In this document: positions 18,156 through 62,200 of the stretch, in pieces
How the letters are laid out: the number at the start of each line of letters is the position of its first letter
How positions within the stretch are numbered: the stretch's first letter is position 1
NCBI GenBank assembly: GCA_965637545.1
Contig: OZ281496.1
Coordinates: 26,970,001-27,034,000 of the forward strand
Origin: Phallusia mammillata
Lineage: Eukaryota
Direction: 5' to 3'
DNA: 64,000 nt
The notes under the pieces: generated by a model
Database searches by the model: none
Seen by the model: only the letters and a program-made list of their open reading frames with translations
Told to the model about the DNA's origin: nothing
Program-made: the position numbers and the translations under genes

Positions 18156-21100
18156 CTATTTGTCAGTCGGGTACTTGCTGCATGACGCTGCAGACGATGA
18201 CGTAGCGCTTTCGTGGTGAGTCAGCGATTCGTAGTATTCCCTTTGTGACTGTGCAAGGACTTGTGCCAATACAGCATTTTCATCTGTCTCGTCCACCCAA
18301 TCGCCCATACCTACGTACAGAGATGCCCACACACAATCTGGGTTACGTATTTGTTCGAAATTTTGGATCTTTGAAACGTATTTACCTGACAACATACATG
18401 CAATGACTGACCGATTTTTTGTCAAGAGTTGTGTTAAAACTTTTACATGTATAATTGGTGGAAAACAAAAACTTTGTGGATTTTTGTGAACAAAACCCAG
18501 TAGTTGGTTAGTTTTGTTTTTCTTAAAACTAGCAAAAGTTTAAAAAGTAAGTGTTAGGCAACTAAAGACCCTGTAGTCATCATGTACCCAATAATGTCAA
18601 AAAAATGCAATTGTGTTACTGTTTAAGTTTGGTGTGTGGTGCCCCAGTTAAAACAAGTTTATTTATCCAAGTTTTAATTTATACAAACAGTATTTTGATA
18701 CAAATGAATTCACAATGCATGTGTCTTGCATACAGCCAGAAATAACCATGAAAGTGGATGTAGTTTTTTGTAAACTAGTTAGATCAACAATCACTTACAA
18801 ACTCAGTGTTTTGTTCCATCTAAATGAAGCATTATATTTTCACATTAATGCCATGCAATACGCACTCTAGCTCCTGCACCATTCACCTTTTAAATGTATG
18901 TGCTTTGAATTTAATTTGAATTTAATACCTGGGTTTCCAAGGAAGTGATTTGAAGCTGATGTTGATGGCTGAGATTCACGGTAAGAACATGACTGCTCTT
19001 CAACCTAGAGCAAGTAAGCATAAAAAGGATACACCTTTTTCCTTAAAGCCACATTGGGATGTAGCAAATCATGGTTATATGCAAAACATAGTAAAATGCA
19101 AACTATGTATCTGGTTAAAAACAATACTACAGTTGTTTATTTGACAATAATTTAGGCCGGGGCGATGCAGACTATTTTTTTGAGCAAGTTGAGGGTATGA
19201 TTGCCAAAAGTTTGTCTTAAATTCAACATGAAGCAAATTGATGTTGATTTTATTGCAAAGTGTGTATTTTCTTCAGTTTCTATTGAAAAGTCACAAGAAA
19301 ATGTATTTAAATAAGTTTTCTATTTGCAACATGTCTTGTTTTGCCCTTGTTGTGTAGTGGGCATTGATTTTGTGACTTGCGCAAGAAAACAACAATACAT
19401 TTTCTCCATTAAAAACAACTGAAGCAATATAAACAAACTTGTGGGAGAAAAGTTTAATACAAAACTGCATTTGTCACCCACTTTGCTGTGATGAGGTGCT
19501 GCTTGTTGAAGTGTTTCTTGTTCTGATGTTAAAGAGGTTTGAGAACAAGAGGGTTCTTTGGATGCACACCCTGCTTGGTCTGTATCATCCAGCTGTAACA
19601 ATTTCAATGTGTTAACCAGTAGTACCATAAGTTGAGGATGCTAAGCACTTGCACAACAAGATACTTTGCTATGTAACTGACAGTATAATCTTGTTCGGCA
19701 CATAAACAATTTGCCACCCTTTTTATGCAATTAACTGGATAATGTAAATAAAAATTTTTCTCACAACCGGCTATGGTTGGGTATGGCGATTGCTAAACAG
19801 ATATGCATCTGTTTGTTTTATTATGAATTGATTTGAAGAATTGTTACTTCCAACTGTTTGATCATGCAAAGGAATGCTCCCCCAAATAGAAGCTGTGTGT
19901 TAGTGTAACACCCCACTCTTTCAAGTGTCTGTACTGTACATAGACCGGTAATCCTGTCACCAGTGTACATTTCTAAAGTTACTTACATAGATAAAGCTAA
20001 TCATCTTTGCATATACCTAGAAACCAAATTTTCAACAGGCATAAACATACCTTATCCAATTTCAAAATGAACCCGAATAACATGACAAACATATATATTA
20101 TTTTGGGCAATCTTTGTGTAACCTTTTGCCATGTAAACATGCTACCAACCTGTTTCTTTTGCCTTGCTAGCTCCTCTTGGTGTCTTAGATAATCAACAAA
20201 AGACTCATGAGCAACTTCTCGCACCAGTTCATCTTCTGTGTTTTCCCAATCAGCTGCTCTCAGTTTGTCCTCTAACATTTGCTGTTCAAGGAGCTCCTGC
20301 TCAGAGGAGCGCTGGGCAGTCTCAAGCAACATCTGGTCAGCCAGCTACATTTTACAACATAAATGTCATTGTATTAAGGAGTGATGTGCCGAAACTGCAA
20401 GTGTTCTGTTTGGTCGAGCACCGAGCATCTCACTTTAATGCTCGGTGCTTGGCCGAACATGCTCGGTGCATTATGACATCACAAAAAAATCCCCTTTCTA
20501 CGTTTTAGCTCTACAAGGCCTCTTACGTCACCTGCGGTGTTTTATTAAGCTGTACATGCCCATAAAGTACGCGTTTTTCCACTATCAGAGTGCATTTAAA
20601 AAATCTTTCGTTTTTGTTCATAGACACCCTTTGGAACACTAGTTACATATGTTAGCAGGGCAAGAGTATGCAAATTTAACGCTCGGGTCAGTTTGTACAA
20701 CTGCTCAGCCGAGCACCGAGCATTAAAAACAGCGATGCTCGGTACCGAGTACTCGGGTACTGGCTCGGCTCGGCCCATCTCTAGTATTAAGTATGTATTT
20801 CAAATGACTACAATTAATACCACAAATTTATAACCAAACAAATACAATGCAACTGGCATGAAAGTTTCAACAAATACAATACAATGGTCATTGGCCAGGC
20901 AAGTTTATCTATTTTGCTTCTGTAGGCAATATGGCATTTTGACATTGCACTTGGACATATATTTTGACATTGCGCATTTTCACATTTTGGCAGTTATAAA
21001 ACTGCACAAATAATTCTTAATTACAACTCCAATATAGAGTAACTGGCACATACACAGACCATTTTCACCAGTTTACAATGTTGGACTAAGTTTAAGATTT

Positions 21101-45500: not shown

Positions 45501-48500
45501 AATATTAATTCATTACAAATTTGTATCCAAAAACAAATTTTTAAAACTTAAATTTGGACAAAGTTTACAAAAAGCTCTAAAAGTAGTTTATGCTTTGAAG
45601 CAAAAGCGTACTACAATTTTTAATTCGAAACAGGAATAAAACAAAATTTCTACTTTAGTTAGTAATAAATTGAAAGGAAAAATACTAGTTTTAAAAGGAT
45701 ATACATTTATAACAGGTTAACAATGAAGCATATCAGTTTTTTTATCTGTTTGGGGTATTTTACTCCTTATTAGACCATAGTTTGGTTGTTAATTTCAACT
45801 GATTCAGGAGAATGAACTGATGTACATATAAAAAGCGGACCCTTAACAACTTACAGTGATCCAACAGGTTGCCATGGAAATGCCTCCAATGGATGTGTCA
45901 GTTAGCTCCATGAACAACTGGTTCTTTGTGTTAGCATCAGTGACTGTGTCACGTATATGTTGTGGCTGAACTATTCCACCAGTTAGATCTTGCAAGATTG
46001 AACCAGCATCCATTGAATTCAACGCTTCATAACACCCAACCAGTCTTCACAGTCATGGAAAACAAAAAAAATAGTGCAAATTCGTGTCCAGAAAATCCAG
46101 AAAAGAAATACAAAATAAAAGTTTTGCTTAACAAGCAAAAAGTTAGTGCAAATGTATACCCAATTAAATGAAACAGCTGAAACAGTTTTGTTATTAGACA
46201 ATAAAATGTAAAAAAAGAAAGATTCTTGCTTCTGATCAGTAGAATATTAGCTTTTTTCCACTTTTTATCGACAGTCCACCACATGTTTGCTTTTTGCAGA
46301 AACTGACGATGACTGTTTTTTAAAAGGCGAAATATATATTTCTGTTATTCAATGAAAGGATTTATGCTTTTTACCTGTTTTTTATACAACAGTCCAATAT
46401 TCCTGATTAAATGATTTGTTTCTAATGGCATGTCCACAATAAAATGTTGTTAATTTATGGCAAAATTTTGTTGCCATAAGGTTTTTGGGGCAAAGTAACT
46501 AAAATGAAGATTTTGAAATGAAGACAAAACCAAAACTAAAAGATTGAAAACAAAAGCACAGTAGCGTAGGTATAAACACAGTTTGACAATTTCTCAGAAA
46601 ATTGCTTTCAACAGTGGTGGCATTTTAACAGGAAGAGAGTGTTTAGGTGTTTCCTTAGCTGCATAGATATGGCCACAAACCTTTGCTTCTTTAAAATTAT
46701 AAACAAAAACACCCTATAGTATCCCATACCTACAGTTCTATACGATACAGTATATATAGTTTGTATTACATTGAACACTCAATATCAAAGTTGGTGTGAT
46801 AAAGATTTTTTATTGTTTATAGTCAGGGTTGCCATACCGTCCTTATTTCTAAGATTTGTCCTTTTTTTGAAGGGTTATGTCTTAGAAAAGTTTATTGTCC
46901 TTATTTCTAAGAAATGTCCTTATTTTTGACTGTAGTCCTTATTTTGTCTTATTTTCAACAGTTACTATAGTCAAACAAGTAAAAGTAACTGCTACATGTA
47001 AAAGTAAACCTAGACCCGGCCTATTGTGAGATGCACTTAGTATTTTCTACGAACAACGAGTTGCTGGAACGGATTGTTTCTGGCCATAAAAGTGCAAATA
47101 TTATGTCATGGCTCGTATAAATGCAAAGATTTGTTCAATAACGTTTGTTTCGTTTCACACAATAATTTAAAGTTTCGGTTGTCCTTATTTTGGGTTTCAA
47201 GTCGATGGCAACCCTGTTTATAGTGCACAAAATCTTGTTAAACCATGTCATTATGTAAAAGCAGTTGATTATCCTTTTTTTGCCAACCAAGTTTTAAATT
47301 AATGGCATATTTTAAATGCACTTTGACATAAAATTTACTGATGTATTTTGTTAGATTTTTGTCGTTCAACAGCCACAAAACATTGGGTTAAAAATCTTTA
47401 AACTTACTTCGCATAAGCCTTCTCCATTAGTGCACTCCAAAATTCATTGCTTTCAGTGGAGTTAACACCACACAGCTTTCCATCTTTACATGGAAGTCTG
47501 TCATCTACTACTACCTCAATCCATACACCAAACCTCCAAAAGCTAAAACATATGAAACATTTGTTGCAGTTGATAATTAGACTGATAGTAAAAGCAAAAA
47601 AAGAGTTCAGTAGCTCGTTTTAAGTGTCACTGGGTAAAATAGCAACCAGTACAGTTAATAAACACTTACCCTTTATTTTTATTTGTTGGTATGTATCCAT
47701 GCCCCCATATACGTTAAAGACAACCGCAAGAAACATTAAACAAGCCATGTTACATGGCCATGCTGCCAATAATTTGCATTTCACAATGTATAACATGATA
47801 TAACACAGTCTGGAACATGCCATGTACACATGACTTGTAGAATAACACTGCAGGTTTAAGGTAACAATATATGCATGCAAAACTTACTTTATAGAAAGTA
47901 TATACAAACACATATATATATATATATTACCGAAATCTAAAAACACCAGAGTAATCTCCTGGTCTTTCTGTGTTCCACTCTTGAGTAGAAATATCAGGAA
48001 CAACCTGAAAAGTTTGGATGTTAAAGTTTAGTCGAAGTACGGTTTCACAAATTCACTATGTAAGATTTCTTGTTCAAACCAGCTAGATGGTGCAAATTTG
48101 AGCTACTAACAGGGTGATAGAGCAAGCAAAAGAATGATGGTGTAAACATTTTAAAATTATCTATTGTCTTCCACCAACAACTAAAATCCCCCCCTCATTC
48201 CATTGGGTTGGAGCCATTTTTCTTAAGTTGCTTGCTCAGGAAAACACAAGTGGATGAGAGAGGATTAGAACCAACAAACTTATGAACACAAAGTCTTAGC
48301 CTAAGTTATTTGTTTACTTACTCTTTTCCACAAATCTTCATAGTTGGCCAGAACTGAACATGCTGCAATAAATGAGGAGCTACCAAACTCTCCACGAATC
48401 AAATCCATGGACGAGGTCCCTTCAATAACCAACCGTGGTGCATTACACAATTCCTACAAGAGATTGAACATTAGTATTAAAAGCTTCAACAAATTATTGG

Positions 48501-48683
48501 GCATCTTACGGAAGGTCTTTTCCACACAATTGAACCAGCATCAGTGTTCTTTAAAAACAAACTTGTAGCCAAAGGTTTGAATTCAGGATCCTCAAAAGGC
48601 TGAGAACTGTCAATGCATTGTTTGCGAATGACTTGGTAATGTTGGTTAGTGTAATACTCCAAGTTTTTCTGATAGTAATCCAT
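39554..48683 (-). CDS. CAPN5/6-like: Calpain-5/6-type protein (CysPc + C2L + C-terminal C2), predicted catalytically inactive
   Basis: Motifs [29 protein letters not shown] (canonical DL-QG-LGNCWF-AAC), [53 protein letters not shown]. The C-terminal C2 ends ...TSDNIYAL* (TAA at 39556-39554). No penta-EF-hand domain. Confidence 0.93.
40360..40504. mobile_element. Tc1/mariner (Tigger-like) MITE, family D copy 2
   Basis: The reverse complement aligns with 17619-17772. The right end GTCCGAATTAACCAAGGTTTACTG is followed by TA. Confidence 0.75.
45041..45256. mobile_element. hAT (Charlie/Buster-type) MITE, family G (216 bp)
   Basis: Perfect TIR CAGTGGTTCTCAAACT/AGTTTGAGAACCACTG. Perfect TSD CTCTAAAT at 45033-45040 and 45257-45264. 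Confidence 0.93.
46824..47216. mobile_element. hAT-type MITE, family H (393 bp)
   Basis: TIR CAGGGTTGCCAT/ATGGCAACCCTG. Perfect TSD TTTATAGT at 46816-46823 and 47217-47224. GTCCTTATTT subterminal repeats. Confidence 0.92.
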
Positions 48684-50860
48684 TTCACTGCAACCCAGCA
48701 ATAACAGTTGTTTTTTTAATATAAAACTTGCAACAATCTGCAAAGAAAAACAAAACAAAGAAAAAGTGTGGATCTTACAAATATAGTTTTTTTTGTCCCT
48801 CTAATGTGGAAATTGTAAATCACTAAAGTGGAAATCTTGTATGCTTTTTGGTTCAACATGCTATCGAATTAAACAGGATTTACAAAATTAAACAAAACAA
48901 AGCACAAGGTTTTACTATCACAGTGAAGGACAGTTCTTATTTGTAAACTTATCAACAAAACTTCATATTTTTAGCTCAAGAAGCCTTGTTTAAATTTAAA
49001 CATGCCTACAGAGAACTTGACATGTACTGTAAAGAAAACAGGTTCTTTCACCAGACGAAATAACTCAAGCCAAAATAAACAGTTAAAGTTCTCTATTAAT
49101 TCCTGAAATAAATTTTAAATCGACTCTTATAAGAATCAAAAACGTTTATCAAATTATACTTTGGTTCAGTTACAATCAGCATAGCCTGGTTATTTTTTGG
49201 TTGTTAGGGACAAATAAAAGTACGCCGAATTTAGTCTGTTATACCTTGTTAGCTTCAACTTCGCTACCACACGCTGCAGTGTGCACATTTGGTAGCCTTC
49301 TGACGTGATCATTAAACCGTGACGACGACAACACCGGATGCTTACTCACGCGTGTCTATAAAATAGAAATCATACAAAACAAAAACAATTTTTTAGTGCA
49401 GACATTTTTAACACTTTTGTAACTCAAAAATTTGTAATTTTAAGAAATTCTACTAATTGCATGTTGCAGATGAATTAAAAAACAACATTTTTGTTGAGTT
49501 ATTTACACTGTAGACCCAAAAATATTTTATTTTTAAAAAGTCGGAATTTTCATTTATTTTTCAGCGCATTTCTAATTCCATAAAAATGCAAAAACTAATC
49601 AATTTTTGGGTTGAGTAGGTTTTTATAGTTAAGCGTTAAGGGCGCTAATGTCAATATACGTGGCCTTGACGAATGCAGAACGCTCCTTAGTGCACGTAAC
49701 CAAAGAGGGGTTCACGGACGCCTGCCATACCGCATTTTTGTGGTCTCCTGCTTAACTGAAAAAGGTAAACGCTTCCGCAGTGATACAAGGTCAGTAAAAA
49801 GCCTAAACCTGAAATTACGTCAGTTAAGTTTTGAACTTACCGAAACGACTCTTGGCGAGACCCAAATGCAAACAGTAGACCCCGCAAAATTGGGGAACCA
49901 GAATTTGTCATTTATGTACCCTTGTTGTATTACAAAGCCAGTGCAATTTAGTTTTACGGCCTCAAAGGTACAATAGCACCGCCAGCACAAGCTTGTAAAA
50001 TGGTCGTCCGTTGGATGCTGTGTTTGCCGACCCCATCGCGTTTTGCGCCCATAAAAATCCCAATGAAACGACACTGGAATCTATTAATTATTTACCTGAG
50101 AAGCTAATTTAACAGACTATTGTTCAGTTTGGCGTGTACGCTTGTTTTATATCACTTTTCTTGGCATATATTTTTTCTATTAGTGTTTAGTCCGCTTGGC
50201 AACCGGCGTGGGGCTGTTGTTAAAAGTTTTGTTGCGAATTGTTCGTGCGTTTTCGGGACAGGTTGTTAGGCAGCAAAAACACACAAGCCTTTTTGTCACC
50301 GAAACAGTCACGTCGTTAGTTGGGTGAAAGCGTTCGCAAAGATTCTAGACAGATCATAGGAAGACGGCCTGCTCAGCATACGCATCTTCACAGTCTCAAC
50401 AAATGAAAAGGAAAAGATAAATAAAGTAGAAAATACGTTTAGGTGGACTTACTGACAAAATTGTAATAGAGATCAGAAGCATAGAGGAGACAAAAAGCTT
50501 TTTATTTGCGTAAATATTCTTCCAGTTTTGTTTCGTTTGGACGTTGGACATTAAAACATGAACGAAACAAATTACATTATGCAGTTATAGATGGCTAGTT
50601 GATTTGCTAAATGGAAGTAAGGTCGAAGTGTTTGCAACGCAAACTAACCATAAATTACAGTCACAGAAAAGTTGCACGATTTTGCTGAGTGTGAATTGAA
50701 AGTTAGGAATAGAAAAGGATGATACAAAACTAGTTCATTTTTGAGTCTTCAAATAGTAAAAAAAATAATAGTAGTTTACATAATGCACAAAAGTGTACAA
50801 AGGGAGGGTTTAGAAATCATTCAAGGAATAACAGGCCCCGGCTTATTCACACAATTATTG

Positions 50861-50936
50861 TGAAACGCTTTGTAGGTAGTTTCAAGTTGTGGAGAATTTA
50901 GATCTCCATGCCTTGCACTGCCTTCAAGGCATTTCA
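50861..50936 (+). ncRNA. mir-196: miR-196 precursor; mature 5p TAGGTAGTTTCAAGTTGTGG starting at 50873
   Basis: The mature arm matches vertebrate miR-196a (UAGGUAGUUUCAUGUUGUUGGG) at all of the first 12 nt and most of the rest. It folds back on TCTCCATGCCTTGCACTGCCTTCA, with a lower stem extending to 50861/50936. Basal UG sits at -14 (50859-50860) and CNNC (CGAC, 50943-50946) 17 nt after the predicted 3p end. Confidence 0.92.
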
Positions 50937-51013
50937 TATCCTCGACAACCAACAACTTAGAATTTATAGTTGTGGTATCCGGATACCAGCAGCACTAACG
51001 CTGCGAGGCAAAA

Positions 51014-51070
51014 ATACCCTGTTTTATGCTAAAACCTGATGACAGTCTAGGTAGCATAACGACAAGGTAT
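51014..51070 (+). ncRNA. Candidate second pre-miRNA; 5p arm TACCCTGTTTTATGCTAAAACC carries the miR-10 seed
   Basis: Manual pairing gives about 21 bp: 17 of the first 18 positions are paired, with one 1-nt and one 3-nt bulge and a small loop. It lies about 80 nt downstream of the miR-196 hairpin on the same strand. Processing motifs are weaker than for miR-196. Confidence 0.55.
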
Positions 51071-53184
51071 CAACGGCCCGTTGGCATAACCAGCGTTGGA
51101 GATTTACAAGACATTAAACATACTTTGTATTAGTCAACCTTAAAAGGGCAATTTATCCGAACTATTAACACGGTAAGTTAAATTTTCTACAGTACGTTTG
51201 GCTAATAAACTAGTGTTTTACTTGGAGTTATGACTTCTTTATTCATGTAAAAAGTAATTCAAATATTATATCATGGTTTGATCTGTTATTTTGTATTGGT
51301 CTTTTGTTCAGTAGTTTCTTACTAAAGCAATTTTGACTAAATATTAAGTATGCGGAGTTCGGTAAGCGACACCGTATTTGTAATACCTCGACACTGTTAA
51401 TTGTGAAAAATAAATAGCGAAAAATAATCGCATACAAAACCTCAGATACACTATTTTAACAATTTCAGTTTCGTTAGTTTCACACGATGTCGTTTTGTTT
51501 CTGGCAGATGTCGTCGATGAAACCATAACAAATCCACCACTACTGGCAAAAGAGAGCAACAAGACTCTTTCCTGATGTGAAGACATGACGAAAATGACCA
51601 AAGAACCAATTAAAGCACTGTAATTTATTCCAAAAGATACCATTGCGCTAACCAATTTGTAATAGCATGCGGCGGCCATTACCACAAATTGATATATATT
51701 GTGACGAATCGTAACAAAAAATGCTGCTTTTTTACTGTAGGCCTATTTGTATAAGATAAAAAAATACAGTTGCCTAATTTTAGCATAGTTTCATTTGCGG
51801 ATTTTATACAGTTACACCCACTCTAATACCGAAACTTTACAACTTATATATCGTCTATCGTTACAATGATGTTGGTTTTTATATTTTTATTTTTTATTTT
51901 AATGTGACTATTTTAAGTGTTTATATATTTTTTTTTTAAATATATATTTTAAAAACATATTTGCATCAATCCAACAACATAGATTATTCTCACATGGGTC
52001 AAGCATTTTAGCCATGTACGTTTTCAAACAATATTAAAGTTCGCCTAAATATAAATTTTAATACTGAATCCGCTTAGTGTACATTTGTTCTAACAAACGC
52101 TACGTTTATTATCATCAATTTAAACTGTAATTCGTTTTGATTAAGCCACTTTTCAAATTTGTGTGTAGCGTTATTAAAATTAAATTTCCCGTGCTTTTTT
52201 TACATCGAGCACCACGTGACCACAAACGCTGGAGGTTGATGAGCGCAGTTAGGTTTTAATCGTTTGCAAGCACATAAAATAAATGGGTTGCCGTCAGACA
52301 CGGCAAATTCCAGGAGTGAACTTTTGACCTTATGCTCGTGAGCTTGAAAGTCATGTCCTATGGTTTTGTTTCCAATTAAACTAAATTTTAATTGTACGAG
52401 TATGTTACGATCGTAGTTAACATTTGTGGCATATTTTAACACTCCTTCGGTCTGTTAGTAAATATAAAATTTGCTCTACTTGTTTTAATTTGTAACATAA
52501 ATTCATGTTAACAAACTTTCTAAAATTGTTCATGCAACAATTAACAAACCATTAGTTTTGGTGTACTTTACTTCAAAAAGTCACAAGCCTATAACTTAAA
52601 ATTTAGGCAAAATATGTAAACTAGGCCACAGTTTAACAAATTTATAAACCAGACTTACCTATACCCTCCAGGTCGCATAGCAAGGTCAAATCAAATCGAT
52701 TCTTAATAGGCATGCAGACAATAAACCATGTTAAGTAAACCACTGGCTGTAAATTAATGATGAGAAACATAGTGACAGTGTTTGTCGTTCCAGTATAGCT
52801 GGTAGCCCGATATGAAAATATGTTCATTACTTCGCGCGACAGTTTATGTAAACGCGTCGTACAAATGACAGACAGTTAATTTACGAGCAGGCATAGCCCG
52901 ATTATATGTACTCGCCATAAGCCGTGGTCCTGCTAATGCTCAGCTCACTGCGCACGTGTTTGCACAGTTCGACGACCCTATACAGGCAGAATGTGCATTC
53001 CAAAGACGCCATAAAACGCATTCTGAAACCAACATGCTCCTTTTTAAAACAGTGGGCTCGTTTTTGAGACGTTTTTTGCTGTAGGCATAATTTAGGACCA
53101 GCGCTGATAACTTAATAGAGAAATCTTGCGAAGTCCTAATTAGCTTAGTAATTCAGAGCTCTGGAAAACATTTTTTTCTCCATA

Positions 53185-53228
53185 GATTTTTACGGGCACG
53201 ATTAATAAACTGATTTTTACGGGCACGA
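53185..53228. repeat. Two 17-bp direct repeats GATTTTTACGGGCACGA (period 27)
   Basis: Exact copies at 53185-53201 and 53212-53228, separated by TTAATAAACT. Confidence 0.9.
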
Positions 53229-56200
53229 AATAAAACTTGTGTTTCTGCAACGAAATTTAAAATTTAGTAAAAAATTGATATTATTGCACTCGCCTTTTCA
53301 TTGTGTTGCATAATTGCTTTTAGAAGTAGAATAAACATCGAGTCACAAAATTCTTCGGCCGAAAAACGCTTGATCCCGTGTTCAGGATCACATGACAAGC
53401 TCAGACATATTCACGAGAGACAGAAGAATCACATGATCAGTTTCCTCATTTGCTGATCCAATGTTGGTTTAAATTTTCTGATTGTCACACAATTAAATAG
53501 ATTAAAGAGATTTTTTTTAAATGTAGCCATCAACAAAATTTTTAGCTCTTCCAGCAGTTTTTATTAAAGTATGCCAACGTTTCCATGTCCCATACGTTAT
53601 GTAGGCATTTTGCCCAAAATCCGAAACCGAAGTTAAAACGAAACTTATTCCGTGGATCGCTTATGCCAATATTGTGATCTGCTAGTACCAAGCCAGGGGG
53701 AGAATAAACAAAAGCGCAAGGCAAGTGACAATTGGGGCAATTTGGTCGGGTAGAGAGAACCGGACGCCCGCGAAACAGCATGTGCGTCCGGTGTACGTTT
53801 TACAGCCGGAGTAAACGAGCCTTAGGTCTGGCCCGTTTAGCATGTTGACCCAGTCGCAAATCTCAGCCAGTCGCGGCGAAAAAACGCCAGGCGGGTTTGT
53901 CCACGCAGTAAAATCAGCGACGCCCGCTAAGGCTCTTCCTAAAGTGTATGCGCACCTGCTGGTTTTCTCGAGAAACAACTTACCTATTGCTAAAGCGACC
54001 ACGACGCTGACCACATTAATAAGCAGTAAAATGGTAGACCTCGCTTGTTTATAGCGACAATATGATATACTCTACAACGAATCGTGAGTAATAAGGGAAA
54101 AGGGTCGTTTCTCAATGCTTTTGCCTTATTACGGTCTTCAGGTATTTATAAGTTATGGGTTTATGTGTGTGATGTCACTGTGTTGGCACGAAAAAGCAAA
54201 TGTAACTATAACGGGTTTCTGGACGCATTTGTAAAATTTAAAAAATGTACTTAGGTTTTAGGCGTTGCGTAACATTTTTTTGTAAAACAAAATTATCGTT
54301 CCTTTATGACGCATCTAATTAAATTGCAGACAAAAACGAATTACCTAAACTAATATATGACGTGAATTTATGCAAACAATACATTAAAAAAATTGCAAAA
54401 TTCAATTGCAAAAACATATATTAACAATTTTTCAGCAACCTTTGAAAATCAATTTTAAAGTTTACACTGTTAACACATTTTTAACAAGACTTGACCAATC
54501 ATTATAAGACTCTAAAATAGGAAAAAATGTCGCAACTCAATACAGGCAAACTTGTTAAAAAGGTTTTTCTCAGGGCGCGTGGTACAATACGACAACAAAA
54601 CACGGCATGGTACAGACTGTTTAATTGTTCGTATTGTTGTTGCATGCGTTGGTCGGCGGAGAATCTTTGAAGTCGTCGGCAACAGTGTTTAATTTATGTT
54701 CTCCCATTGACAAAACAACCAGTTGCATTGTCCAAGCGGCATCGACAGATCTTCGCCCGTTTGTGACATAATTGCCAGCAGTCGCGCTGCACCCGTCGAA
54801 AATACACCGAATCCCGCTGATACAACTTCCCCCCATACAACTTGCAGTTTTGTAGAGACTTGTGCCTTCGCTAATCGATGCTGAAACCGCGCATTTGAAA
54901 CTTAAAGCAATAGAGTTTGCCTCGAAAACGCTAGTCACAAATTAAAAGGGTAGATTATTTAAAACTTTATTGAAAAGAAAACTTGTATTCGGTTTTGCAC
55001 TGATAATAGTAACAGAAATTGTCAAAACGTTTACGAAAAGTGTTTCGGAAAAAAGTTTTTGGCGGTTGCATTTTATTTTGATAAACTTAAAAGTTTTAAG
55101 AGAATAAAAACCACATTTTTAAATGCTTAGTTCAGTCAAAAAATAAAATATATCCATATGTAGCAAAATTGATATTTTTGTTTCATTAAATCAAATTTGT
55201 TGAACTAGCAACATAACTTGTTGGAATCAGGCTTCTGGGATTTAAAGCCTAAAACCTTGCCCCAATGCCCTGCTTTTTTATTTTCCCAAAAAATATCGAT
55301 AATCGATAGCTTGTTGTGCCAACGTTTCACACAACATTCTTCCGATTTCATTTTGTGGGTCGTAAAAGTCGTTCGAAGACAAAACATCAAAAGCAATGTC
55401 CCGGTTGGCCTTGAGTATCAAAGAGGGTGCAAAAGGGACAATGAAGCTTTTTACGGGAAGCCGCAAGTTTACCTTCGTGCCAGACGCCTCGTAGTCAGGC
55501 AATGTATCGTTTGACGTCATAATATTGACTCGCTTAAGCTAACATTTTTTATTGCCGTCTTTGCATGCATTTCACCTGTTAACCTATGGTGGCGCAAGCA
55601 GCCAAAACCTTGGAATTTTTTGATGAATGTTATAACTGCACAGTTCTGGTTCATTATAACCGCTAGTATATTATAATGCATCAGGTCGTGCCATATGGCG
55701 TAGCGCTTAGGCGTTTTATTATCAAAATATAAGAAAAAATGACAAATAAAGCAAAACGAAACCGAATTACAGGCAGTGTGAGCCCAGAGAGATGAATAAG
55801 CCCAAAAAACATGGGCCACTAACTCCAATGAAAACTCGAACTATTATGCAATATATGTAACAGCGTTGAAAAGACTATAAATATATAAATGGACGATCAT
55901 CTGTTTTTAACTTAACGATGGTTTGATTCAACCGTGAAATGCCAGTATGCAATAATTGGATAAAAAACAGCAAAAAATAAGAAAAAAACGACGCTGTAAC
56001 GGAACAAAAGCTGTGTTGACAGATAGGAATATAAAACTAGTCCTAAACGGTGTCTGAAATACAAATAAAAGTAAAATGGCGACTGCTCCAAGGCTGTTTG
56101 ATGCACTTTTTAGCTTTAGACTTCAAGCATAACTGTATTTCCAGCCTTTGGCGTACAATTGTGGCTTTATAAAAGTCGGATAAAGAACAGAGAGGGCAAT

Positions 56201-56767
56201 AAATTAGAAGGAAACCTGGTTTTAGCGTTTCGACATATTGTGGTGTCCTGACAAAAATATTTTTAATGACAGAAGTATTTTAAACCGTTATGCTTTGTTA
56301 AAAATATTCACTTGTATTTTAATTACCAATTTTTCTAAATAATATCCCAATCTTTGTTGTAGTGTATGGGTAAATAACCTGGACCAAATGTTCAGTCTTT
56401 TAACGAGCCTTAACGACTTTTTTTACATAATACAAAGAGAACTTTTTCAAAATCAATACCTCTACTGTTCAGATTAACATACAGCATGTGTCTTGCCATA
56501 TGGGAATGCTTGAGCGACAGACTGATTTAGGATAACGCTTTGAATGGGCCTACTATGTCTGTACTGTTAAATGTTAGGTGTTTTAGGCGTGTACAGTCGC
56601 ACATGCAAAGAGCCTTTAGTCGCCGACCAGTAGCACTTGTAAAAAAAACTGTGCAAAACGCGAGGTTTTCACACAATACACGTTTTCCATCTCATCAACG
56701 TGTCCAGCATGCTTGTTCCCACACAATAGGGCTTGACAACCCGTCATGTCAGGAAGTAGTTAAAACG

Positions 56768-58854
56768 TCAGGGACTAATAAAAGTCAGTTCTCGGCGTTC
56801 GTCGGTCTCTTCGTCGTTCGCTAACTTGTCTTCGTCCTCATCTTCGCCGCCAAGTTCCCCGCGGTTCAACATCCTTTTCTTCTTCATGCGACGATTTTGA
56901 AACCAAATCTTGACTTGTCGGTCGCTTAAGTTAACCCTATGGGCTATTGCCTCTCGCATTTCCCTGCTGATGAACTCGTTCATAGCGAATTCCCTTTCCA
57001 ATTCAGCTAACTGGTACTTGGTGTACGGGCGGCGGCGGCGACGCTGGTGACCGGTGCGGCCGATCGTCGTCATATCAGGGGAGTAATGCTGAGACGGAAC
57101 GCCGGGGCCGTAAGGTGGATGGTGGTGGTGATATGGCTGGTTGACTAGGGCCACTGGGTCGTGAGGAGCGACTGAAGAAAATAATATTATGTCACTATTT
57201 GTACATTTATGGGCTTGTACACTATGCTTGAGATGTGTTTCCACGTGAATTATAATGCGTTCGTTTTTGACGGGGTTTAAACTTTTGCTGGGCCAAAGAG
57301 AGGAAATTAAAAGACATTTTTTGACATTTTTATGAAAAGCACCTACACTTGTGCTACTAGAAGTGTGTGTTCCACAAGTTAACTGAAATTATTATGCGTT
57401 TTGTGACAAAATTACCATAGTGTCATAGTGAAGGAAGAAGATAGTGATTTTTACATTTTGTGCTATACGTTAGGTGCAACACTCGTATGACATTTGAAAT
57501 ATATTTCCTTAAGTGTTTTCAAAACTGTCACACATCCCCTGGCAAACAACAACCCTTTTTGTAAAATATCTGGAGTATCAAAAAAGACATAATACAAAAT
57601 TACATTTTAAATATCGGACGTCCAAACACAATATTAAAGCATGGGTGCCCGCCCTTTTATTTATGACTATAGTTTTCGGTAAGGGCCGATTTTATGCGAA
57701 TTGAAGACATGTTGCTTTATATATGTTTACCAAAGCAATCAGGATTTATTACATGACACAATAAAAAAACTCTTCAAACCAACCTTGAGAAGAGAACGGC
57801 GTAAAATCAGCTGATGGAGCGTGAAGACCGGTTTGGTGGTGATAATGTGGGTAATAAAAATGGGGGTATTGGTGGATTGGCGCACCGTAGTGGTCCACTG
57901 CAAAAAAAACTTATTACTTTTCCGCCAAAATATTCGGCTTCCAGATGAGAAGTTTGACTTACCAGTTCCGAAGTACAAGCCGTCTGTGGAATGACTGGTA
58001 GCAACCGCTGTGGCTTGACTGATCGAGTCAAACTGATGGTATTCGTGGCTGGCTGGGGTATGTGAAACTGAATACCTTGAATGATCCGTGTTTCCAACAT
58101 TACCGTACAAACCCTGTGAAGTTATGCGGGATTTTAAATCGTTTGTGTAGTACCCAGCACCGTGATCTTGCGCCGGTTTGCCGACTGTCGAAAATGCGGG
58201 ATGGATCGGGCTCGACATGTCGGTCTTGACCGGGATCGGTTGCTGCAAAACCCGCCGCGTGATCTCATCGACGCCCGACGTCGGCTGATGTCGGCCATTT
58301 TCCTGGTCGCTTTGGCTCACTGAAGCGAGGGACTTGGGCGAGACGCGCAGCTCCCCTGTTGAATCGGCGCCATCTACAGACTGGGAGTTGCTTACTTTCC
58401 GGTGTATTTCCGGAATGTATGAAGGCACGTTCTCGCCAAAGGAAATAGGTACGGAAGTGTGGTTTTTCCAAGGCTGGTGGGCTTCTGGTTTAATATGCTT
58501 CACCTCCCTTTGCAAATGTTGCACCGAAATTTGATCCTTATGACGGGTGTCGGTTGTTGGCAGAGCCGTGGAATATTTCGGCTGTTCAGACCAGTGGTGA
58601 ATATCTTCCCTACGTTGGTACTGGTGACTTGCAATGTGTCCTAGCTCAGCGTCACTAGGAAGCCTTGATCGCCCCAAATACCCATCTGAAGGGGAATATA
58701 CCTTTGTGGAGTCCATCTGTAAGGGAGGAGGAGCCGAATGTTCAATTGAAATGATATTTGGGGGCAATGATGGGGCAGGATGAGGGTTCCCGTCGCTGAC
58801 AACAAAATTCATGTTTAAGTGGTAATTCCCCGTTGAATCGCTTTGCGCTGTCAT
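56768..58854 (-). CDS. Hox12: Posterior (AbdB-class) Hox gene, ascidian Hox12 (Hox11/12/13) type, 2 coding exons
   Basis: Exon 58854-57963 (donor G|GTAAGT) splices in phase 1 to exon 57171-56768. Homeodomain [60 protein letters not shown]. No YPWM hexapeptide. The Hox12 label relies on remembered similarity to the Ciona gene; posterior-class status is secure. Confidence 0.85.
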
Positions 58855-59682
58855 TGGTGGATACGAGCAACGTGATGAGACACCTTTTATCCGACAAGTT
58901 ATAATATATAATGTAAACACCTGTAAGTTAAATCATTGGTATATTATGATGATTTTAAAATTCTGTTACGCCCTTAAAGAGATATGCGTTTACAATCACT
59001 TAGAACGTGTTAAATTCGCACACGCGGCATAAATTCGCCAAAACGATCTTGTAAAACAGATTTAACACAGTCGTATATTTTAGTTTACGGTGAATCGAGC
59101 CCAATAAATCCGACAACAGCTATAGTGATGCGAGCTGTAAACTGCCAAATATAAGCAGTTTTTGGCAGAAATATCTTGCCGCGAATGCTGTAATCTGTTG
59201 CTACCTGAAAACTATCCGTCGTATATTTTTTATTATAACCGACTTTATTACGTCGTTTTGTCACCTGCCCACTCATGCTGCAGTTAATCTGTACAAGCAT
59301 TAGGACGTTTACTGCTCATAAATATCTCGCAAAGGAACCAATGTCCGATCTATTATCGTGGAGCCACTGTATCGACACCTCGTAAAGAGCTATTTAGCTG
59401 CATAATAAACTACACTGCTAAGCAAGTATATTCTCTATCTGCCTTCAGTACTGCTCCTTCAATGCAAAAAAACTGTTTTCGAATCCATTATTTACGGAGA
59501 CGCATAACTGACAAGAAATGAGCGACTCTTTGTCGGACCTGTTGCTTATGAGTGATGCTGCTTCTGCTGTGCTGCTCATCAGTCAACTGATCATCTCTTT
59601 GCCATAAAACGCAAACTACGACGGGTCTCGTATGCCTAGCAGTGCCGTCAATGATTAGCTTTCTCTCAGGGCGGCTCGCCTG

Positions 59683-59692
59683 TGATTTATGG
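59683..59692. promoter_or_regulatory. Candidate PBX-HOX composite site TGATTTATGG upstream of Hox12
   Basis: Exact match to the established Pbx/Exd-posterior Hox consensus, about 830 bp upstream of the predicted ATG. Nearby: GCCATAAAA (59601-59609), TTTACGG (59491-59497) and TGACAA (59509-59514). Confidence 0.45.
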
Positions 59693-62200
59693 CCCAGCAT
59701 ACAAAGGAAAGGACCCAGGAATTAAAGCATTCAAAACAGTTATGACACGAAACCGCTTGCCTATTGTTTTAGGTTCGATCAGGGTCTACCACCGCCACGG
59801 GTCCTCATTTGCCTTTGAATTTCCCACACTGTTACCACCTATTGTTTACACTTGAAAGGGGCGCCTACGCTTATAGTGCTTTAGTGATTTAGGAGCTGGC
59901 TGCAACCGATACTTTTCAATTGATGACATGAACTGCCAGACATGACATGTATTTATTATTATTTTACCAACACTATTACATTTCATATCGCTGGACGTGC
60001 AGTCAGATGGATATGTTCAACAAACAATATTTTTTTTGTAGTTTAATGGTTGGAATGGAAGCTTTGGTCGTTTGGAATTATATGGTCATGTAAGGGTAAA
60101 ATTAATTGCATTTGTCTCAAATTGAATTATAGTGTTTTTATAAATTGTAAATCAATACTGTTAATAGACAATTGATATATTCCTGATTTCCTATACTAGC
60201 ACATGTAATAAAATCTAGTATAGGAAGTCAATAAATAAACAAAACCCACTTGTCGCACTGAGTGATATACCGTTTTCGGCGTCTTGCATTTTTCCAACAC
60301 CACGTCAGTTTCCATTACAAAGTGCTGTGTCAAGTTGGAAACGACTTCAGTGGTCTTCGTGCACGTTCCAGTCCCGCTGAAGACGCGTGATTGAATCCAG
60401 TTGAAAAAACATTGGCCATTTTCCAGCTCTGCTTTTAGTTACGTATCAATACATTGCGGCATGTGTCGTCTTGTATCATCCACTTGCGCTAGTGTACGAT
60501 GGAACCCTTCGATACCGCGGCTATGCCCATAGCGGGTATATTTAAGCAACAAAATTCCAACTACCAAATTTGTTGGCACTTGTTTTGACAAAAAATGCGC
60601 TATAAGTTTTTCTAGCCTTAAAGTTTGAACACAGAAAATTTCAACTACTTTTCGAAGTTTAAAAATTATAATACTCAAACCTGTTTCGAACGGCTTGTTT
60701 TGAACGACGGACTGCAAAAAAGCGATTTGGGTAAGAGATTGTCAAAAAATGTTTTGGGTCAAAAATACGAATGTTGTGGCATAAATGCGGTGTCAAAATT
60801 CTTCACGATATCTAACAAATTTTTATTTACTGTAATTTGCCAAATTTGTAAATAGCAAAAAGTGTGACTAAATTGTTTTGTGTTCGGGTTTTTCGATTTA
60901 TTCTCTCGGCGCAGGGCGGCAAGTCAAAGCAATCCACAAGAATGATGTCTTGTCTGTGCCTACCACACTCCCTAAACGGAGAAGTTGAGTTTGAACGCGC
61001 CGGCCTAGCACTTCGGCATCGGCGGAGCACGAAAGAAAACAGACACGGCATAAATCAAAGCGCCATGACCACTAACCAGCAGAGCTACGGGCCCTGGTTC
61101 ACAAGCAAGCACCGTTGGATAGACACAGGTTACCCAGGTCGAGGCTTCAAAGTCGCAGAGTCAGATCAAAACGGAGCGTGTAATTCAAATGCAGGTTTAT
61201 TGCTTATGTCCAACTGGTTTGATACTCTAAGCGTGCGAGGCGTTAACACGCAGTTCCCAGGAGTAAGAAAGCACGGCGTCGCTCGCTTCAGTGAAAGTTG
61301 GTTTACCTGTTTCAGTTTCCGAATGACATAAACATGTGCAAACGACTTCAATAAGCAACGAGTCGCTTCCGAAGTCTCGCGCGTTTAACTCCTCGCAATT
61401 ATGTCGTAACAAAGCGGGTGCCACGTCATATTACGACAGGTGCCCCGTGCCGTTCCACTGACTGACAAGACGTTAGCGACGGAATGTTTGCGACAAGCAA
61501 CTCGCTTTTTTGGCCGCATTATGTGCATGTCTTCAGATGTTCAAACTTAAATTTAACTTGTCGGCCTTGGGGGTTAAGCAAATTGCGTGCTCTTAAACAT
61601 GCAAAAGAGTCCACCAATCGCTTTCAAATTATCTGAATCAGTAAATAAAGTCACAGCTTTTTCGAAGTTGGAATTAAGTCGCTTAAAACCCAAAAAAATG
61701 TTTAAAATGAATGCAAGGGGCAAATTTGCACATAAATTGGTTGGTTTATTACTACCAGCAAAAAAAACATGCAGCATTATATATTATGTAAGTATATGTA
61801 TAGAACATTTATTAACGAGGCATATGATGACAATATTGCTTTTTTGACACTTGTTGAATTTGTATTTTTGAAACATTTTGATACATCACATTCAAATGAT
61901 CTTGAAATACTACATCTTATTAAAAAAAGTAGAACATGGCACATTTCGGACTTTCTGGGTATTTGGACTTACGTGTAAACAGTTATCCGGGATTCTAGAA
62001 TTTATTTCCGTTTTTACGAGGCAACAATCGATTTGCCGTGCTTTTGTAGCCTTTCCGTGGTTCGTATTGCCAATGCACAAACCCAAACCCCTCATATTGT
62101 TGTTTTAACATTCAGCGAAAATTTTTAAGGCTTCATGTGCAAATTACGGGTTCGCTTATGAAACAGAATAGCCTGTGAATGTTTTGGATAAGTTTTACGT

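What the first reader, a model, noticed from the sequence alone, without database searches (positions are those of the whole stretch)
50859..50946. miR-196 lies 3' of Hox12 and on the opposite strand, not in the vertebrate Hox9/10 position
Seen in sequence: a canonical miR-196 hairpin with basal UG and CNNC, on the + strand about 5.8 kb beyond the stop codon of the minus-strand Hox12. The two are convergent, and no other Hox gene is in the window. Established: vertebrate miR-196 genes lie between Hox9 and Hox10 and are co-oriented with the Hox genes. Inference: the miRNA stayed linked to a posterior Hox gene through cluster disintegration but was inverted, or it travelled with a shared tail-tip enhancer block. 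I saw no perfect seed site in the ~850 nt of Hox12 3' region I scanned.
Basis: partly seen in the sequence, partly recalled or inferred. Interest (0 to 1): 0.72.

Follow-up and report, generated by a model that had tools for sequence, protein, structure and literature searches.

The report
Sea squirt miR-196 beside Hox12
This is a real copy of the microRNA miR-196, 5.8 kb past the end of the Hox12 gene on the opposite strand, but this layout is the normal one for sea squirts and its Hox linkage was already reported for Ciona in 2012, so it is solid but largely ordinary.

Summary
A stable hairpin lies at 50859-50946 (+). It has the miR-196 seed, a basal UG at -14 and a CNNC at +17. It sits 5,822 nt beyond the stop codon of a minus-strand Hox12, convergent with it, and the window holds no other homeobox.

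The hairpin is the orthologue of the known ascidian mir-196. Its 5p arm matches 19 of 20 nt of the Ciona product (9,373 small-RNA reads) and 19 of 20 nt of the Halocynthia prediction.

The layout is not special to this genome. Six further distinct ascidian-like loci have the same hairpin 3.6-9.5 kb 3' of the Hox12 homeobox exon on the opposite strand. Published Halocynthia coordinates give the same relation at 7.2 kb. There the miRNA also lies 6.9 kb 3' of Hox10 and is co-oriented with it, which is the vertebrate relation. The likeliest history is therefore an old inversion of a Hox10+miR-196 block, followed by loss of Hox10 from this locus.

"Isolated Hox12" is unproven. Hox13 lies head-to-head with Hox12 in every ascidian mapped, and the window ends 5.1 kb upstream of Hox12.

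No miR-196 seed site occurs in Hox12 in any of nine loci. A 2012 review already places Ciona miR-196 and miR-4069 next to posterior Hox genes.

The parts
50859..50946 (+). mir-196 precursor region, from the basal UG to the CNNC
   Evidence: Fold -37.5 kcal/mol, z -5.9. Rfam mir-196 32.3 bits over 50864-50933. UG at -14 and CNNC at +17. Conserved hairpin in six other distinct loci; the alignment of five of them with the window has 5 compensatory pairs.
50873..50894 (+). predicted mature miR-196-5p (guide), seed AGGUAGU
   Evidence: Matches 19/20 of the sequenced Ciona 5p product and 19/20 of Halocynthia miR-196. The first 10 nt are invariant in all loci.
50905..50926 (+). predicted 3p (passenger) arm
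   Evidence: Placed from the fold with a 2-nt overhang. This arm varies between species while pairing is kept.
51014..51070 (+). second hairpin with a miR-10-type seed (mir-4069-like), same strand; its seed begins 143 nt after the miR-196 5p start; probably on the same primary transcript
   Evidence: Fold and ACCCUGU seed. Also present after miR-196 in L007 and L013. The 2012 review names miR-4069 as the partner of miR-196 in Ciona.
55696..56767 (-). Hox12 3'UTR, about 1.0-1.07 kb
   Evidence: RNA-type contigs from three studies end at 55696, 55710 and 55772. No miR-196 seed sites.
56768..57171 (-). Hox12 last exon with the homeobox and stop codon
   Evidence: Open frame and WFQNRR motif. Best named hits are Hox-C12/D12. 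Near-identical to the Ci-Hox12 homeodomain.
57784..57897 (-). Hox12 small middle exon (predicted)
   Evidence: GT-AG sites read by eye. The joined frame gives 469 aa with no internal stop. The length of the 2,524-nt contig fits this model.
57963..58854 (-). Hox12 first coding exon, ATG at 58854
   Evidence: Sequence and frame. Only 16-25% identical to the matching ORFs of the other loci.
48486..48683 (-). first coding exon of the neighbouring calpain-5/6 gene (context only): its ATG is 2.2 kb from the hairpin and the two are divergent
Evidence: ORF. This neighbour is not seen in the other loci.

Best explanation
The hairpin is this ascidian's orthologue of mir-196. It is a canonical Drosha/Dicer substrate, and its 5p arm UAGGUAGUUUCAAGUUGUGGAG is the guide strand. 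It is probably transcribed on the + strand together with the mir-4069-like hairpin about 140 nt downstream.

Its place, a few kb 3' of Hox12 and convergent with it, is the ancestral ascidian arrangement and not a peculiarity of this genome.

The likeliest history has three steps:
1. The olfactorean ancestor had Hox12 > Hox10 > miR-196 on one strand, as vertebrates still do.
2. In stem ascidians a block holding Hox10 and miR-196 was inverted. This put the miRNA tail-to-tail with Hox12 while leaving it 3' of and co-oriented with Hox10. Halocynthia still shows this state.
3. In the enterogonid lineage (Ciona, Corella, this genome) Hox10 moved away. The break fell between Hox10 and the miRNA, so miR-196 stayed with Hox12/Hox13.

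Hox12 itself is not a seed-type target of the miRNA.

Shown here: the hairpin, its conservation, its position and strand, and the lack of seed sites. Inferred: processing in this species, co-transcription with the second hairpin, the order of rearrangements, and any selective reason for the linkage.
For: Fold and processing motifs:
-.

Family:
- Rfam's best local match is mir-196, with 19/22 identity to its consensus.
- The arm matches 19/20 of the Ciona mir-196 5p, which has 9,373 small-RNA reads and is identical in C. savignyi.
- It matches 19/20 of Halocynthia miR-196.

Conservation:
- The same 5p arm, with at most 3 changes, lies on the strand opposite Hox12 in L002 (7.6 kb from the homeobox exon), L003/L004/L005 (6.6-7.1 kb), L006 (9.5 kb), L007 (5.0 kb), L009 (4.1 kb) and L013 (3.6 kb).
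- All of these fold as hairpins.
- In the six-sequence alignment (L013 was fetched later and is not in it), 27 pairs are predicted and 5 show changes on both sides. The 5p arm is nearly invariant while the loop and 3p arm drift.
- No protein-coding similarity between the window's other flanks and those loci was found. The miRNA-Hox12 pair therefore outlasted the surrounding gene order.

Halocynthia scaffold S54:
- Hox10 158584-158763 (+), miR-196 165680-165756 (+), Hox12 173794-172939 (-), Hox13 193787-193966 (+).
- Strands of conserved miRNAs in that paper were set by miRBase hits.

Other points:
- Enterogonids have no Hox10 link to Hox12/13. No second homeobox lies within 9-14 kb beyond the miRNA in four loci.
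- No seed sites occur in the Hox12 3'UTR or coding sequence here, or in 1.1 kb 3' of the stop in eight other loci.
- The 2012 review places Ciona miR-196 and miR-4069 next to posterior Hox genes.
Against: - There is no RNA evidence for the miRNA in this species. The four runs laid had no contig over 50800-55695. All were contig sets, which lose short and rapidly processed RNAs.
- The Rfam score is below the curated cut-off. Rfam found no mir-196 at E <= 0.01 in L007, L009 or L013.
- The species behind the six loci are unnamed (metagenome-type assemblies), so the phylogenetic breadth is inferred from sequence divergence only.
- The Halocynthia layout joins coordinates from two papers. Both cite the ANISEED assembly, but I could not confirm they used the same version, and I could not read that sequence.
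- Molgula oculata has Hox10 on the other side of Hox13. The Hox10-miR-196 adjacency is therefore not universal in stolidobranchs, and the order of rearrangements is not fixed by the data.
Confidence: 0.78

Rival explanations
1. The miRNA alone was flipped by a small local inversion next to Hox12 after the cluster broke up. Its present strand then says nothing about Hox10.
For: In the window and in six other loci only Hox12 is nearby, and the miRNA is antisense to it. In Molgula oculata Hox10 is not on the 3' side of Hox12.
Against: In Halocynthia the miRNA lies 6.9 kb 3' of Hox10 on the same strand. That is exactly the vertebrate relation. A lone flip of the miRNA would have had to recreate this by chance. 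Botrylloides shares the Hox10(+) / Hox12(-) / Hox13(+) layout.
Confidence: 0.15
2. Hox12, not the miRNA, is the inverted element. Hox10, miR-196 and Hox13 keep the ancestral strand, and Hox12 was flipped in place between them.
For: On Halocynthia S54, Hox5, Hox10, miR-196 and Hox13 are all on + and only Hox12 is on -. Hox12 and Hox13 are in opposite orientation in every ascidian listed.
Against: With those strands the gene order Hox5 < Hox10 < Hox12 < Hox13 runs against colinearity. Treated as a signed permutation, three local inversions (Hox5, Hox10+miR-196, Hox13) with Hox12 unchanged explain the layout. A single Hox12 flip does not explain why the miRNA lies between Hox10 and Hox12. This is my own reasoning, not a computed result.
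Confidence: 0.2
3. The hairpin is a chance or decaying stem-loop that happens to carry a miR-196-like or let-7-like seed. It is not a working microRNA gene.
For: The Rfam score is below the gathering threshold. No RNA contig covers it.
Against: z = -5.9. Microprocessor motifs sit at the canonical distances. The 5p arm is kept in six other distinct loci whose Hox12 first exons are only 16-25% identical. Compensatory pairs are present. The Ciona orthologue gives 9,373 5p reads.
Confidence: 0.03

Closest known systems
Ciona mir-196 (cin-mir-196) with its neighbour mir-4069
   Same: The 5p arm is 19/20 identical. A second hairpin with a miR-10-type seed lies just downstream on the same strand. Both are reported next to the posterior Hox genes of Ciona.
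   Different: There is one base change at position 11 (C here, A in Ciona). The 3p arm and loop differ. The review words the position only as 'upstream of posterior Hox orthologues' and gives no strand. I could not read the Ciona locus itself.
Halocynthia roretzi miR-196 on scaffold S54
   Same: The mature sequence is 19/20 identical. It lies 7.2 kb 3' of the Hox12 homeobox on the opposite strand, against 5.8 kb from the stop codon here.
   Different: Halocynthia still has Hox10 6.9 kb on the other side, co-oriented with the miRNA. Here the next gene on that side is a calpain-5/6 gene 2.2 kb away and divergent. The Halocynthia Hox12 homeobox is split by an intron. Here it is continuous.
Vertebrate mir-196a/b, embedded between Hox10 and Hox9
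   Same: Same seed and 19/22 identity to the Rfam consensus. Linked to posterior Hox genes. In Halocynthia it has the same relation to Hox10.
   Different: It is on the strand opposite its nearest Hox gene. Ascidians have no Hox9, Hox8 or Hox7, so the classical vertebrate targets (Hox8 and Hox7 paralogues, from general knowledge) do not exist. No seed site occurs in the adjacent Hox gene. It scores below Rfam's cut-off.
Drosophila iab-4/iab-8 and other Hox-embedded miRNAs
   Same: A miRNA gene kept at a posterior position of a Hox complex.
   Different: Unrelated sequence family. iab-4/8 is transcribed from both strands and targets neighbouring Hox genes. Neither is shown here.

Membership tests
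mir-196 microRNA family (Rfam RF00256; miRBase cin-mir-196) | 5p arm with seed AGGUAGU and overall likeness to the miR-196 mature sequence | tested here: met
   TAGGTAGTTTCAAGTTGTGGAG at 50873-50894. It matches 19/22 of the Rfam consensus, 19/20 of the Ciona 5p and 19/20 of Halocynthia.
mir-196 microRNA family (Rfam RF00256; miRBase cin-mir-196) | Score at or above Rfam's curated gathering threshold | tested here: not met
   32.3 bits against 55.4, and nothing at gathering level. This is a database cut-off, not a biological trait. Membership rests on orthology to the sequenced Ciona gene.
mir-196 microRNA family (Rfam RF00256; miRBase cin-mir-196) | Stable precursor hairpin with microprocessor motifs | tested here: met
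   -37.5 kcal/mol, z -5.9. UG at -14 and CNNC at +17.
mir-196 microRNA family (Rfam RF00256; miRBase cin-mir-196) | miRNA-type conservation: guide arm fixed, loop free, pairing kept | tested here: met
   Six-sequence alignment with 27 pairs, 5 of them with compensatory changes and the 5p arm nearly invariant. A seventh locus, L013, agrees.
mir-196 microRNA family (Rfam RF00256; miRBase cin-mir-196) | Mature ~22-nt RNA detected in this species | not testable with these tools
   Only contig sets were served, and none lies over the hairpin. The Ciona orthologue has 9,373 reads.
Ascidian Hox12 (posterior Hox, paralogue groups 11-13) | Homeodomain closest to Ci-Hox12 and Hr-Hox12 rather than to ascidian Hox10 or Hox13 | tested here: met
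   I compared the window homeodomain by eye with the sequences printed in Sekigami 2017 Additional file 1 (machine-read text with errors). It is near-identical to Ci-Hox12 and clearly unlike Ci-Hox10 and Ci-Hox13.
Ascidian Hox12 (posterior Hox, paralogue groups 11-13) | Best vertebrate relatives are paralogue group 12 | tested here: met
   Nearly all named vertebrate hits are Hox-C12 or Hox-D12 (83-95 bits). The first named Hox10 and Hox11 hits score 76 and 73 bits. PDB Hox13 and Hox9 chains score 65-72 bits. The tree groups the ascidian clade with PG12 and apart from one Hox10 and one Hox11 reference, with support 82/90.
Ascidian Hox12 (posterior Hox, paralogue groups 11-13) | Strict one-to-one orthology with vertebrate Hox12 | tested here: inconclusive
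   The tree had no Hox9 or Hox13 rows and only 60 columns. The literature calls the orthology of ascidian posterior Hox genes ambiguous.
Ascidian Hox12 (posterior Hox, paralogue groups 11-13) | Head-to-head neighbour Hox13 | not testable with these tools
   The window ends 5.1 kb upstream of the Hox12 ATG. Published homeobox-to-homeobox distances are 7.7-20 kb.
Vertebrate-type embedded position of mir-196 (3' of Hox10, 5' of Hox9, same strand) | Same strand as the flanking Hox genes | tested here: not met
   Convergent with Hox12 here and in six other distinct loci.
Vertebrate-type embedded position of mir-196 (3' of Hox10, 5' of Hox9, same strand) | Directly 3' of Hox10 | tested here: not met
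   There is no Hox10 in the window or within 9-14 kb beyond the miRNA in four loci. The feature is met in Halocynthia by published coordinates only.

The most novel reading that the evidence does not exclude
miR-196 is a fixed landmark of the posterior Hox cluster of vertebrates and tunicates. Its place 3' of and co-oriented with Hox10 in Halocynthia would anchor ascidian 'Hox10' to vertebrate paralogue group 10. It would also date a Hox10+miR-196 block inversion to the ascidian stem. That the miRNA-Hox12 pair survived at 3.6-9.5 kb while all other local gene order was lost would mean the two share a posterior regulatory landscape under selection.
Probability: 0.4. Interest if true: 0.5.

Novelty: new member of a known kind. 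Interest (0 to 1): 0.3.

Why it matters
The orthology of tunicate posterior Hox genes to vertebrate groups 9-13 cannot be settled from 60-residue homeodomains. A non-coding landmark with a conserved position gives an independent handle on that question. If miR-196 marks the 3' side of Hox10 in both vertebrates and stolidobranch ascidians, it supports the Hox10 assignment. It also gives a concrete series of rearrangements for how the ascidian cluster came apart.

Ascidians lack the Hox7 and Hox8 genes that miR-196 represses in vertebrates (general knowledge), and the miRNA does not target its neighbour Hox12. What a Hox-linked miR-196 regulates in ascidians is therefore open.

For the scan itself, this finding is a correct annotation of a known gene in its usual place.

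Tried and rejected
- Rfam at gathering level over the whole window found nothing. Only a local permissive scan shows mir-196.
- Rfam at E <= 0.01 on L007, L009 and L013 did not find mir-196. It found only a hammerhead pair.
- RNA support: 20 runs were listed, all as contigs and none on record as RNA. Four were laid on 50800-56799, and contigs cover only the Hox12 3'UTR and exon.
- I walked beyond the miRNA in four loci looking for a co-oriented Hox10. There is no second homeobox within 10.4 kb (L010), 9.4 kb (L011), 14.3 kb (L012) or 14.1 kb (L014). All these loci have an unsplit Hox12 homeobox, unlike Halocynthia and Botrylloides. They are probably not styelid or pyurid species, so this is not a test of the stolidobranch layout.
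- I looked for the window's calpain and other flank proteins in the loci and found none.
- L001 and L008 show no hairpin, but their contigs end 5.7 and 5.3 kb after the Hox12 exon, so they are uninformative.
- I could not name the species of the loci. Hox12 exon 1 is only 16-25% identical between them. The length window of the word search shuts out full-length annotated tunicate proteins, so no named tunicate hit was obtained.
- I did not use the large representative search, because the protein was not left open.
- None of the loci carries the Ciona or Halocynthia 5p variant, so none is from those species.
- Ikuta 2004 (PMC524048) is not held. A search for the old Ciona scaffold 81 together with Hox12 gave nothing, so the exact Ciona layout was not checked.
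- Repeat sharing between L010 and L012 (72-78% identity) did not settle whether the two loci of one sample come from one genome.
Full report
**1. The observation**

The stretch 50859-50946 (+) folds into a single long hairpin: MFE -37.5 kcal/mol, shuffle mean -18.8, z = -5.9, and none of 200 shuffles folds as well.

The 5' arm reads TAGGTAGTTTCAAGTTGTGGAG (50873-50894). A permissive local Rfam scan gives mir-196 (RF00256) as by far the best family: 32.3 bits, E = 3e-5, full-length match to the model, and 19 of 22 guide positions equal to the consensus. The score is below the family's gathering score of 55.4, so the standard whole-window scan reports nothing.

Measured from the 5p start and the 3p end predicted from the fold, a UG sits at -14/-13 (50859-50860) and a CNNC at +17 (50943-50946).

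The only homeobox in the window is on the minus strand. By eye and by frame, the gene has these parts:
- three coding exons at 58854-57963, 57897-57784 and 57171-56768
- a predicted protein of 469 aa with no internal stop

The stop codon is 5,822 nt from the end of the hairpin, and the two genes are convergent.

**2. The miRNA**

Supplementary tables of the miRTRAP paper list Ciona mir-196 with 9,373 reads for the 5p product UAGGUAGUUUAAAGUUGUGG. The product is identical in C. savignyi. The window differs at one position.

The Halocynthia survey lists miR-196 as UAGGUAGUUACAAGUUGUGG, which is again one difference.

The hairpin is therefore the orthologue of a sequenced ascidian miRNA. Expression in this species could not be shown. 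The runs on offer were contig sets, and none has a contig between 50800 and 55695. That is weak negative evidence for a short, quickly processed RNA.

**3. The Hox gene**

- Among named proteins, the homeobox exon hits vertebrate Hox-C12 and Hox-D12 almost exclusively, at 83-95 bits. The first named Hox10 and Hox11 hits score 76 and 73 bits.
- PDB Hox13 and Hox9 homeodomains score 65-72 bits.
- A small tree puts the twelve ascidian-like sequences in one clade (92/91). That clade groups with PG12 and apart from the single Hox10 and Hox11 rows (82/90). The tree has no Hox9 or Hox13 rows.
- The homeodomain printed for Ci-Hox12 in Sekigami 2017 Additional file 1 is nearly the same as the window's. 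Hr-Hox12 is close. Ci-Hox10 and Ci-Hox13 are clearly different.

The gene is Hox12 in ascidian nomenclature. Whether that equals vertebrate group 12 one-to-one is called ambiguous in the literature, and I could not settle it.

RNA-type contigs from three studies end at 55696, 55710 and 55772. One 2,524-nt contig has exactly the length expected from the three-exon model plus about 56 nt of 5'UTR. The 3'UTR is therefore about 1.0-1.07 kb.

**4. Whether the arrangement is special**

I fetched the DNA around the closest unnamed homologues of the homeobox exon. I then searched for the 5p arm, allowing up to 4 or 5 mismatches depending on the search. In every locus with enough downstream sequence the arm is present, on the strand opposite the Hox gene.

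| Locus | Distance from the homeobox exon |
|---|---|
| L002 | 7.6 kb |
| L003/L004/L005 (three contigs of one assembly that encode the same Hox12 exon protein and carry the same hairpin; probably haplotype copies) | 6.6-7.1 kb |
| L006 | 9.5 kb |
| L007 | 5.0 kb |
| L009 | 4.1 kb |
| L013 | 3.6 kb |

All fold as hairpins. In the six-sequence alignment the 5p arm is almost invariant, the loop is free, and 5 of 27 pairs change on both sides while staying paired.

These genomes are far apart. The Hox12 first exons are only 16-25% identical. None of the window's other flank proteins, the calpain included, is found in the loci. The miRNA-Hox12 pair has thus outlived the surrounding gene order.

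Two contigs (L001, L008) end 5.3-5.7 kb after the exon and say nothing. The species of the loci are unnamed metagenome-type assemblies. None carries the Ciona or the Halocynthia variant of the 5p arm.

**5. Published coordinates change the interpretation**

DeBiasse 2020 Table S3 gives homeobox coordinates for Halocynthia scaffold S54:
- Hox5 20844-21023 (+)
- Hox10 158584-158763 (+)
- Hox12 173794-172939 (-)
- Hox13 193787-193966 (+)

Wang 2017 Table 1 gives miR-196 at S54 165680-165756 (+). In that paper the strands of conserved miRNAs were set by miRBase hits. Both papers cite the ANISEED assembly, but I could not verify that they used the same version.

Taken together, the Halocynthia miRNA lies 7.2 kb 3' of Hox12 and is convergent with it, as in the window. 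It also lies 6.9 kb 3' of Hox10 on the same strand, which is the vertebrate relation. The 2012 review states that vertebrate miR-196 lies between Hox9 and Hox10; that it shares their strand is general knowledge.

I read the layout as a signed order. The ancestral order is 13, 12, 10, miR-196, 5 on one strand. The Halocynthia layout follows from three local inversions: Hox13, the Hox10+miR-196 block, and Hox5. Hox12 is unchanged. This is my own reasoning.

Enterogonid ascidians have Hox10 elsewhere, next to Hox5/6. That fits the window and the four loci in which no second homeobox lies within 9-14 kb beyond the miRNA. Those loci have an unsplit Hox12 homeobox, unlike Halocynthia and Botrylloides. 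They are probably not styelid or pyurid species, so they do not test the stolidobranch layout.

**6. "Isolated Hox12"**

In all seven ascidians of Table S3 (two Ciona species, Corella, Botrylloides, Molgula, Halocynthia), Hox12 and Hox13 are head-to-head. Their homeoboxes lie 7.7-20 kb apart.

The window ends 5.1 kb upstream of the Hox12 ATG and 7.1 kb from the homeobox. Hox13 is therefore expected just beyond the right end, on the + strand. Its absence from the window is not evidence of isolation.

**7. Function**

The second hairpin at 51014-51070 has a miR-10-type seed. It lies on the same strand, with its seed beginning 143 nt after the miR-196 5p start. The same pair occurs in L007 and L013. 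The 2012 review names miR-4069 as the partner of miR-196 in Ciona. A shared primary transcript is likely but not shown.

The calpain-5/6 ATG at 48683 (-) is 2.2 kb from the hairpin and divergent from it. A shared promoter region is possible in this genome, but that neighbour is not conserved.

No 8mer, 7mer or 6mer miR-196 site occurs in the Hox12 3'UTR or coding sequence here, nor in the 1.1 kb after the stop codon in eight other loci. About 0.25 six-mers per UTR are expected by chance, so the absence is not a significant depletion. Hox12 is not a seed-type target. Targets in ascidians remain unknown.

**8. Novelty**

[quoted passage not shown] An earlier follow-up of this scan, on the neighbouring hairpin in the same window, reached that paper too.

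I found no paper that states the strand, the position 3' of Hox12, or the Hox10 relation in Halocynthia. The library lacks most subscription journals and miRNA databases.

The finding is therefore a correct annotation of a known gene in its standard ascidian place. It comes with a modest new synthesis about how that place arose.

**9. Scores**

| Item | Value |
|---|---|
| Observation | confirmed |
| Interpretation | partly supported |
| Novelty | new member of a known kind |
| Interest | 0.3 |
| Confidence, main reading | 0.78 |
| Confidence, block-inversion step alone | about 0.5-0.6 |

Noticed in passing
L002/L010 and L009/L012 (both ENA ERZ21736675); L006/L011 and L013 (both ENA ERZ25067576): Two assemblies each contain two different Hox12-like homeobox exons, each with its own convergent miR-196 hairpin. 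The second type (L009, L013) has a long-branch homeodomain. This could be a duplicated Hox12-miR-196 locus in one genome or two ascidians in one sample. Shared old repeats (72-78% identity) did not settle it.
   Followed up: partly
window 51014-51070 (+); L007 about 181 nt after the miR-196 5p start; L013 13408-13488: A mir-4069-like hairpin with the miR-10 seed ACCCUGU follows miR-196 on the same strand in the window and in L007. L013 holds an 84%-identical copy of the L007/L014 hairpin. It was not found within 700 nt in L002, L003, L004, L006 or L009. It is therefore not unique to Ciona, as the 2012 review had it.
   Followed up: partly
L007 11755-11795 (+) and 11508-11548 (-): Two hammerhead type I ribozyme matches in opposite orientation, 34 bits (equal to the gathering score) and 30 bits, about 1.1-1.3 kb 3' of the Hox12 stop codon. 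They look like a repeat-borne hammerhead pair.
   Followed up: no
window 59640-59747 and L001 6315-6426: A non-coding match of 114 nt at 74.6% identity lies about 0.8-1.1 kb upstream of the Hox12 ATG in both loci. Apart from the homeobox it is the only nucleotide-level match between them, so it is a candidate Hox12 promoter-proximal element.
   Followed up: no
window 48486-48683 (-) and 50859 (+): The calpain-5/6 start codon and the miR-196 hairpin are 2.2 kb apart and divergent, so a shared bidirectional promoter region is possible in this genome. The calpain is not next to miR-196 in the other loci.
   Followed up: partly
window 57898-57962 (-): Hox12 appears to have a very short (65 nt) first intron, followed by a 114-nt exon rich in His, Tyr and Pro. 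The model fits the length of a 2,524-nt RNA-type contig, but that stretch lay outside the 6 kb laid, so no splice joint was seen.
   Followed up: partly
L011 17820-20009 (+): LINE-like ORFs (endonuclease and reverse transcriptase domains) are inserted about 7-9 kb beyond the miR-196 hairpin of that locus.
   Followed up: no
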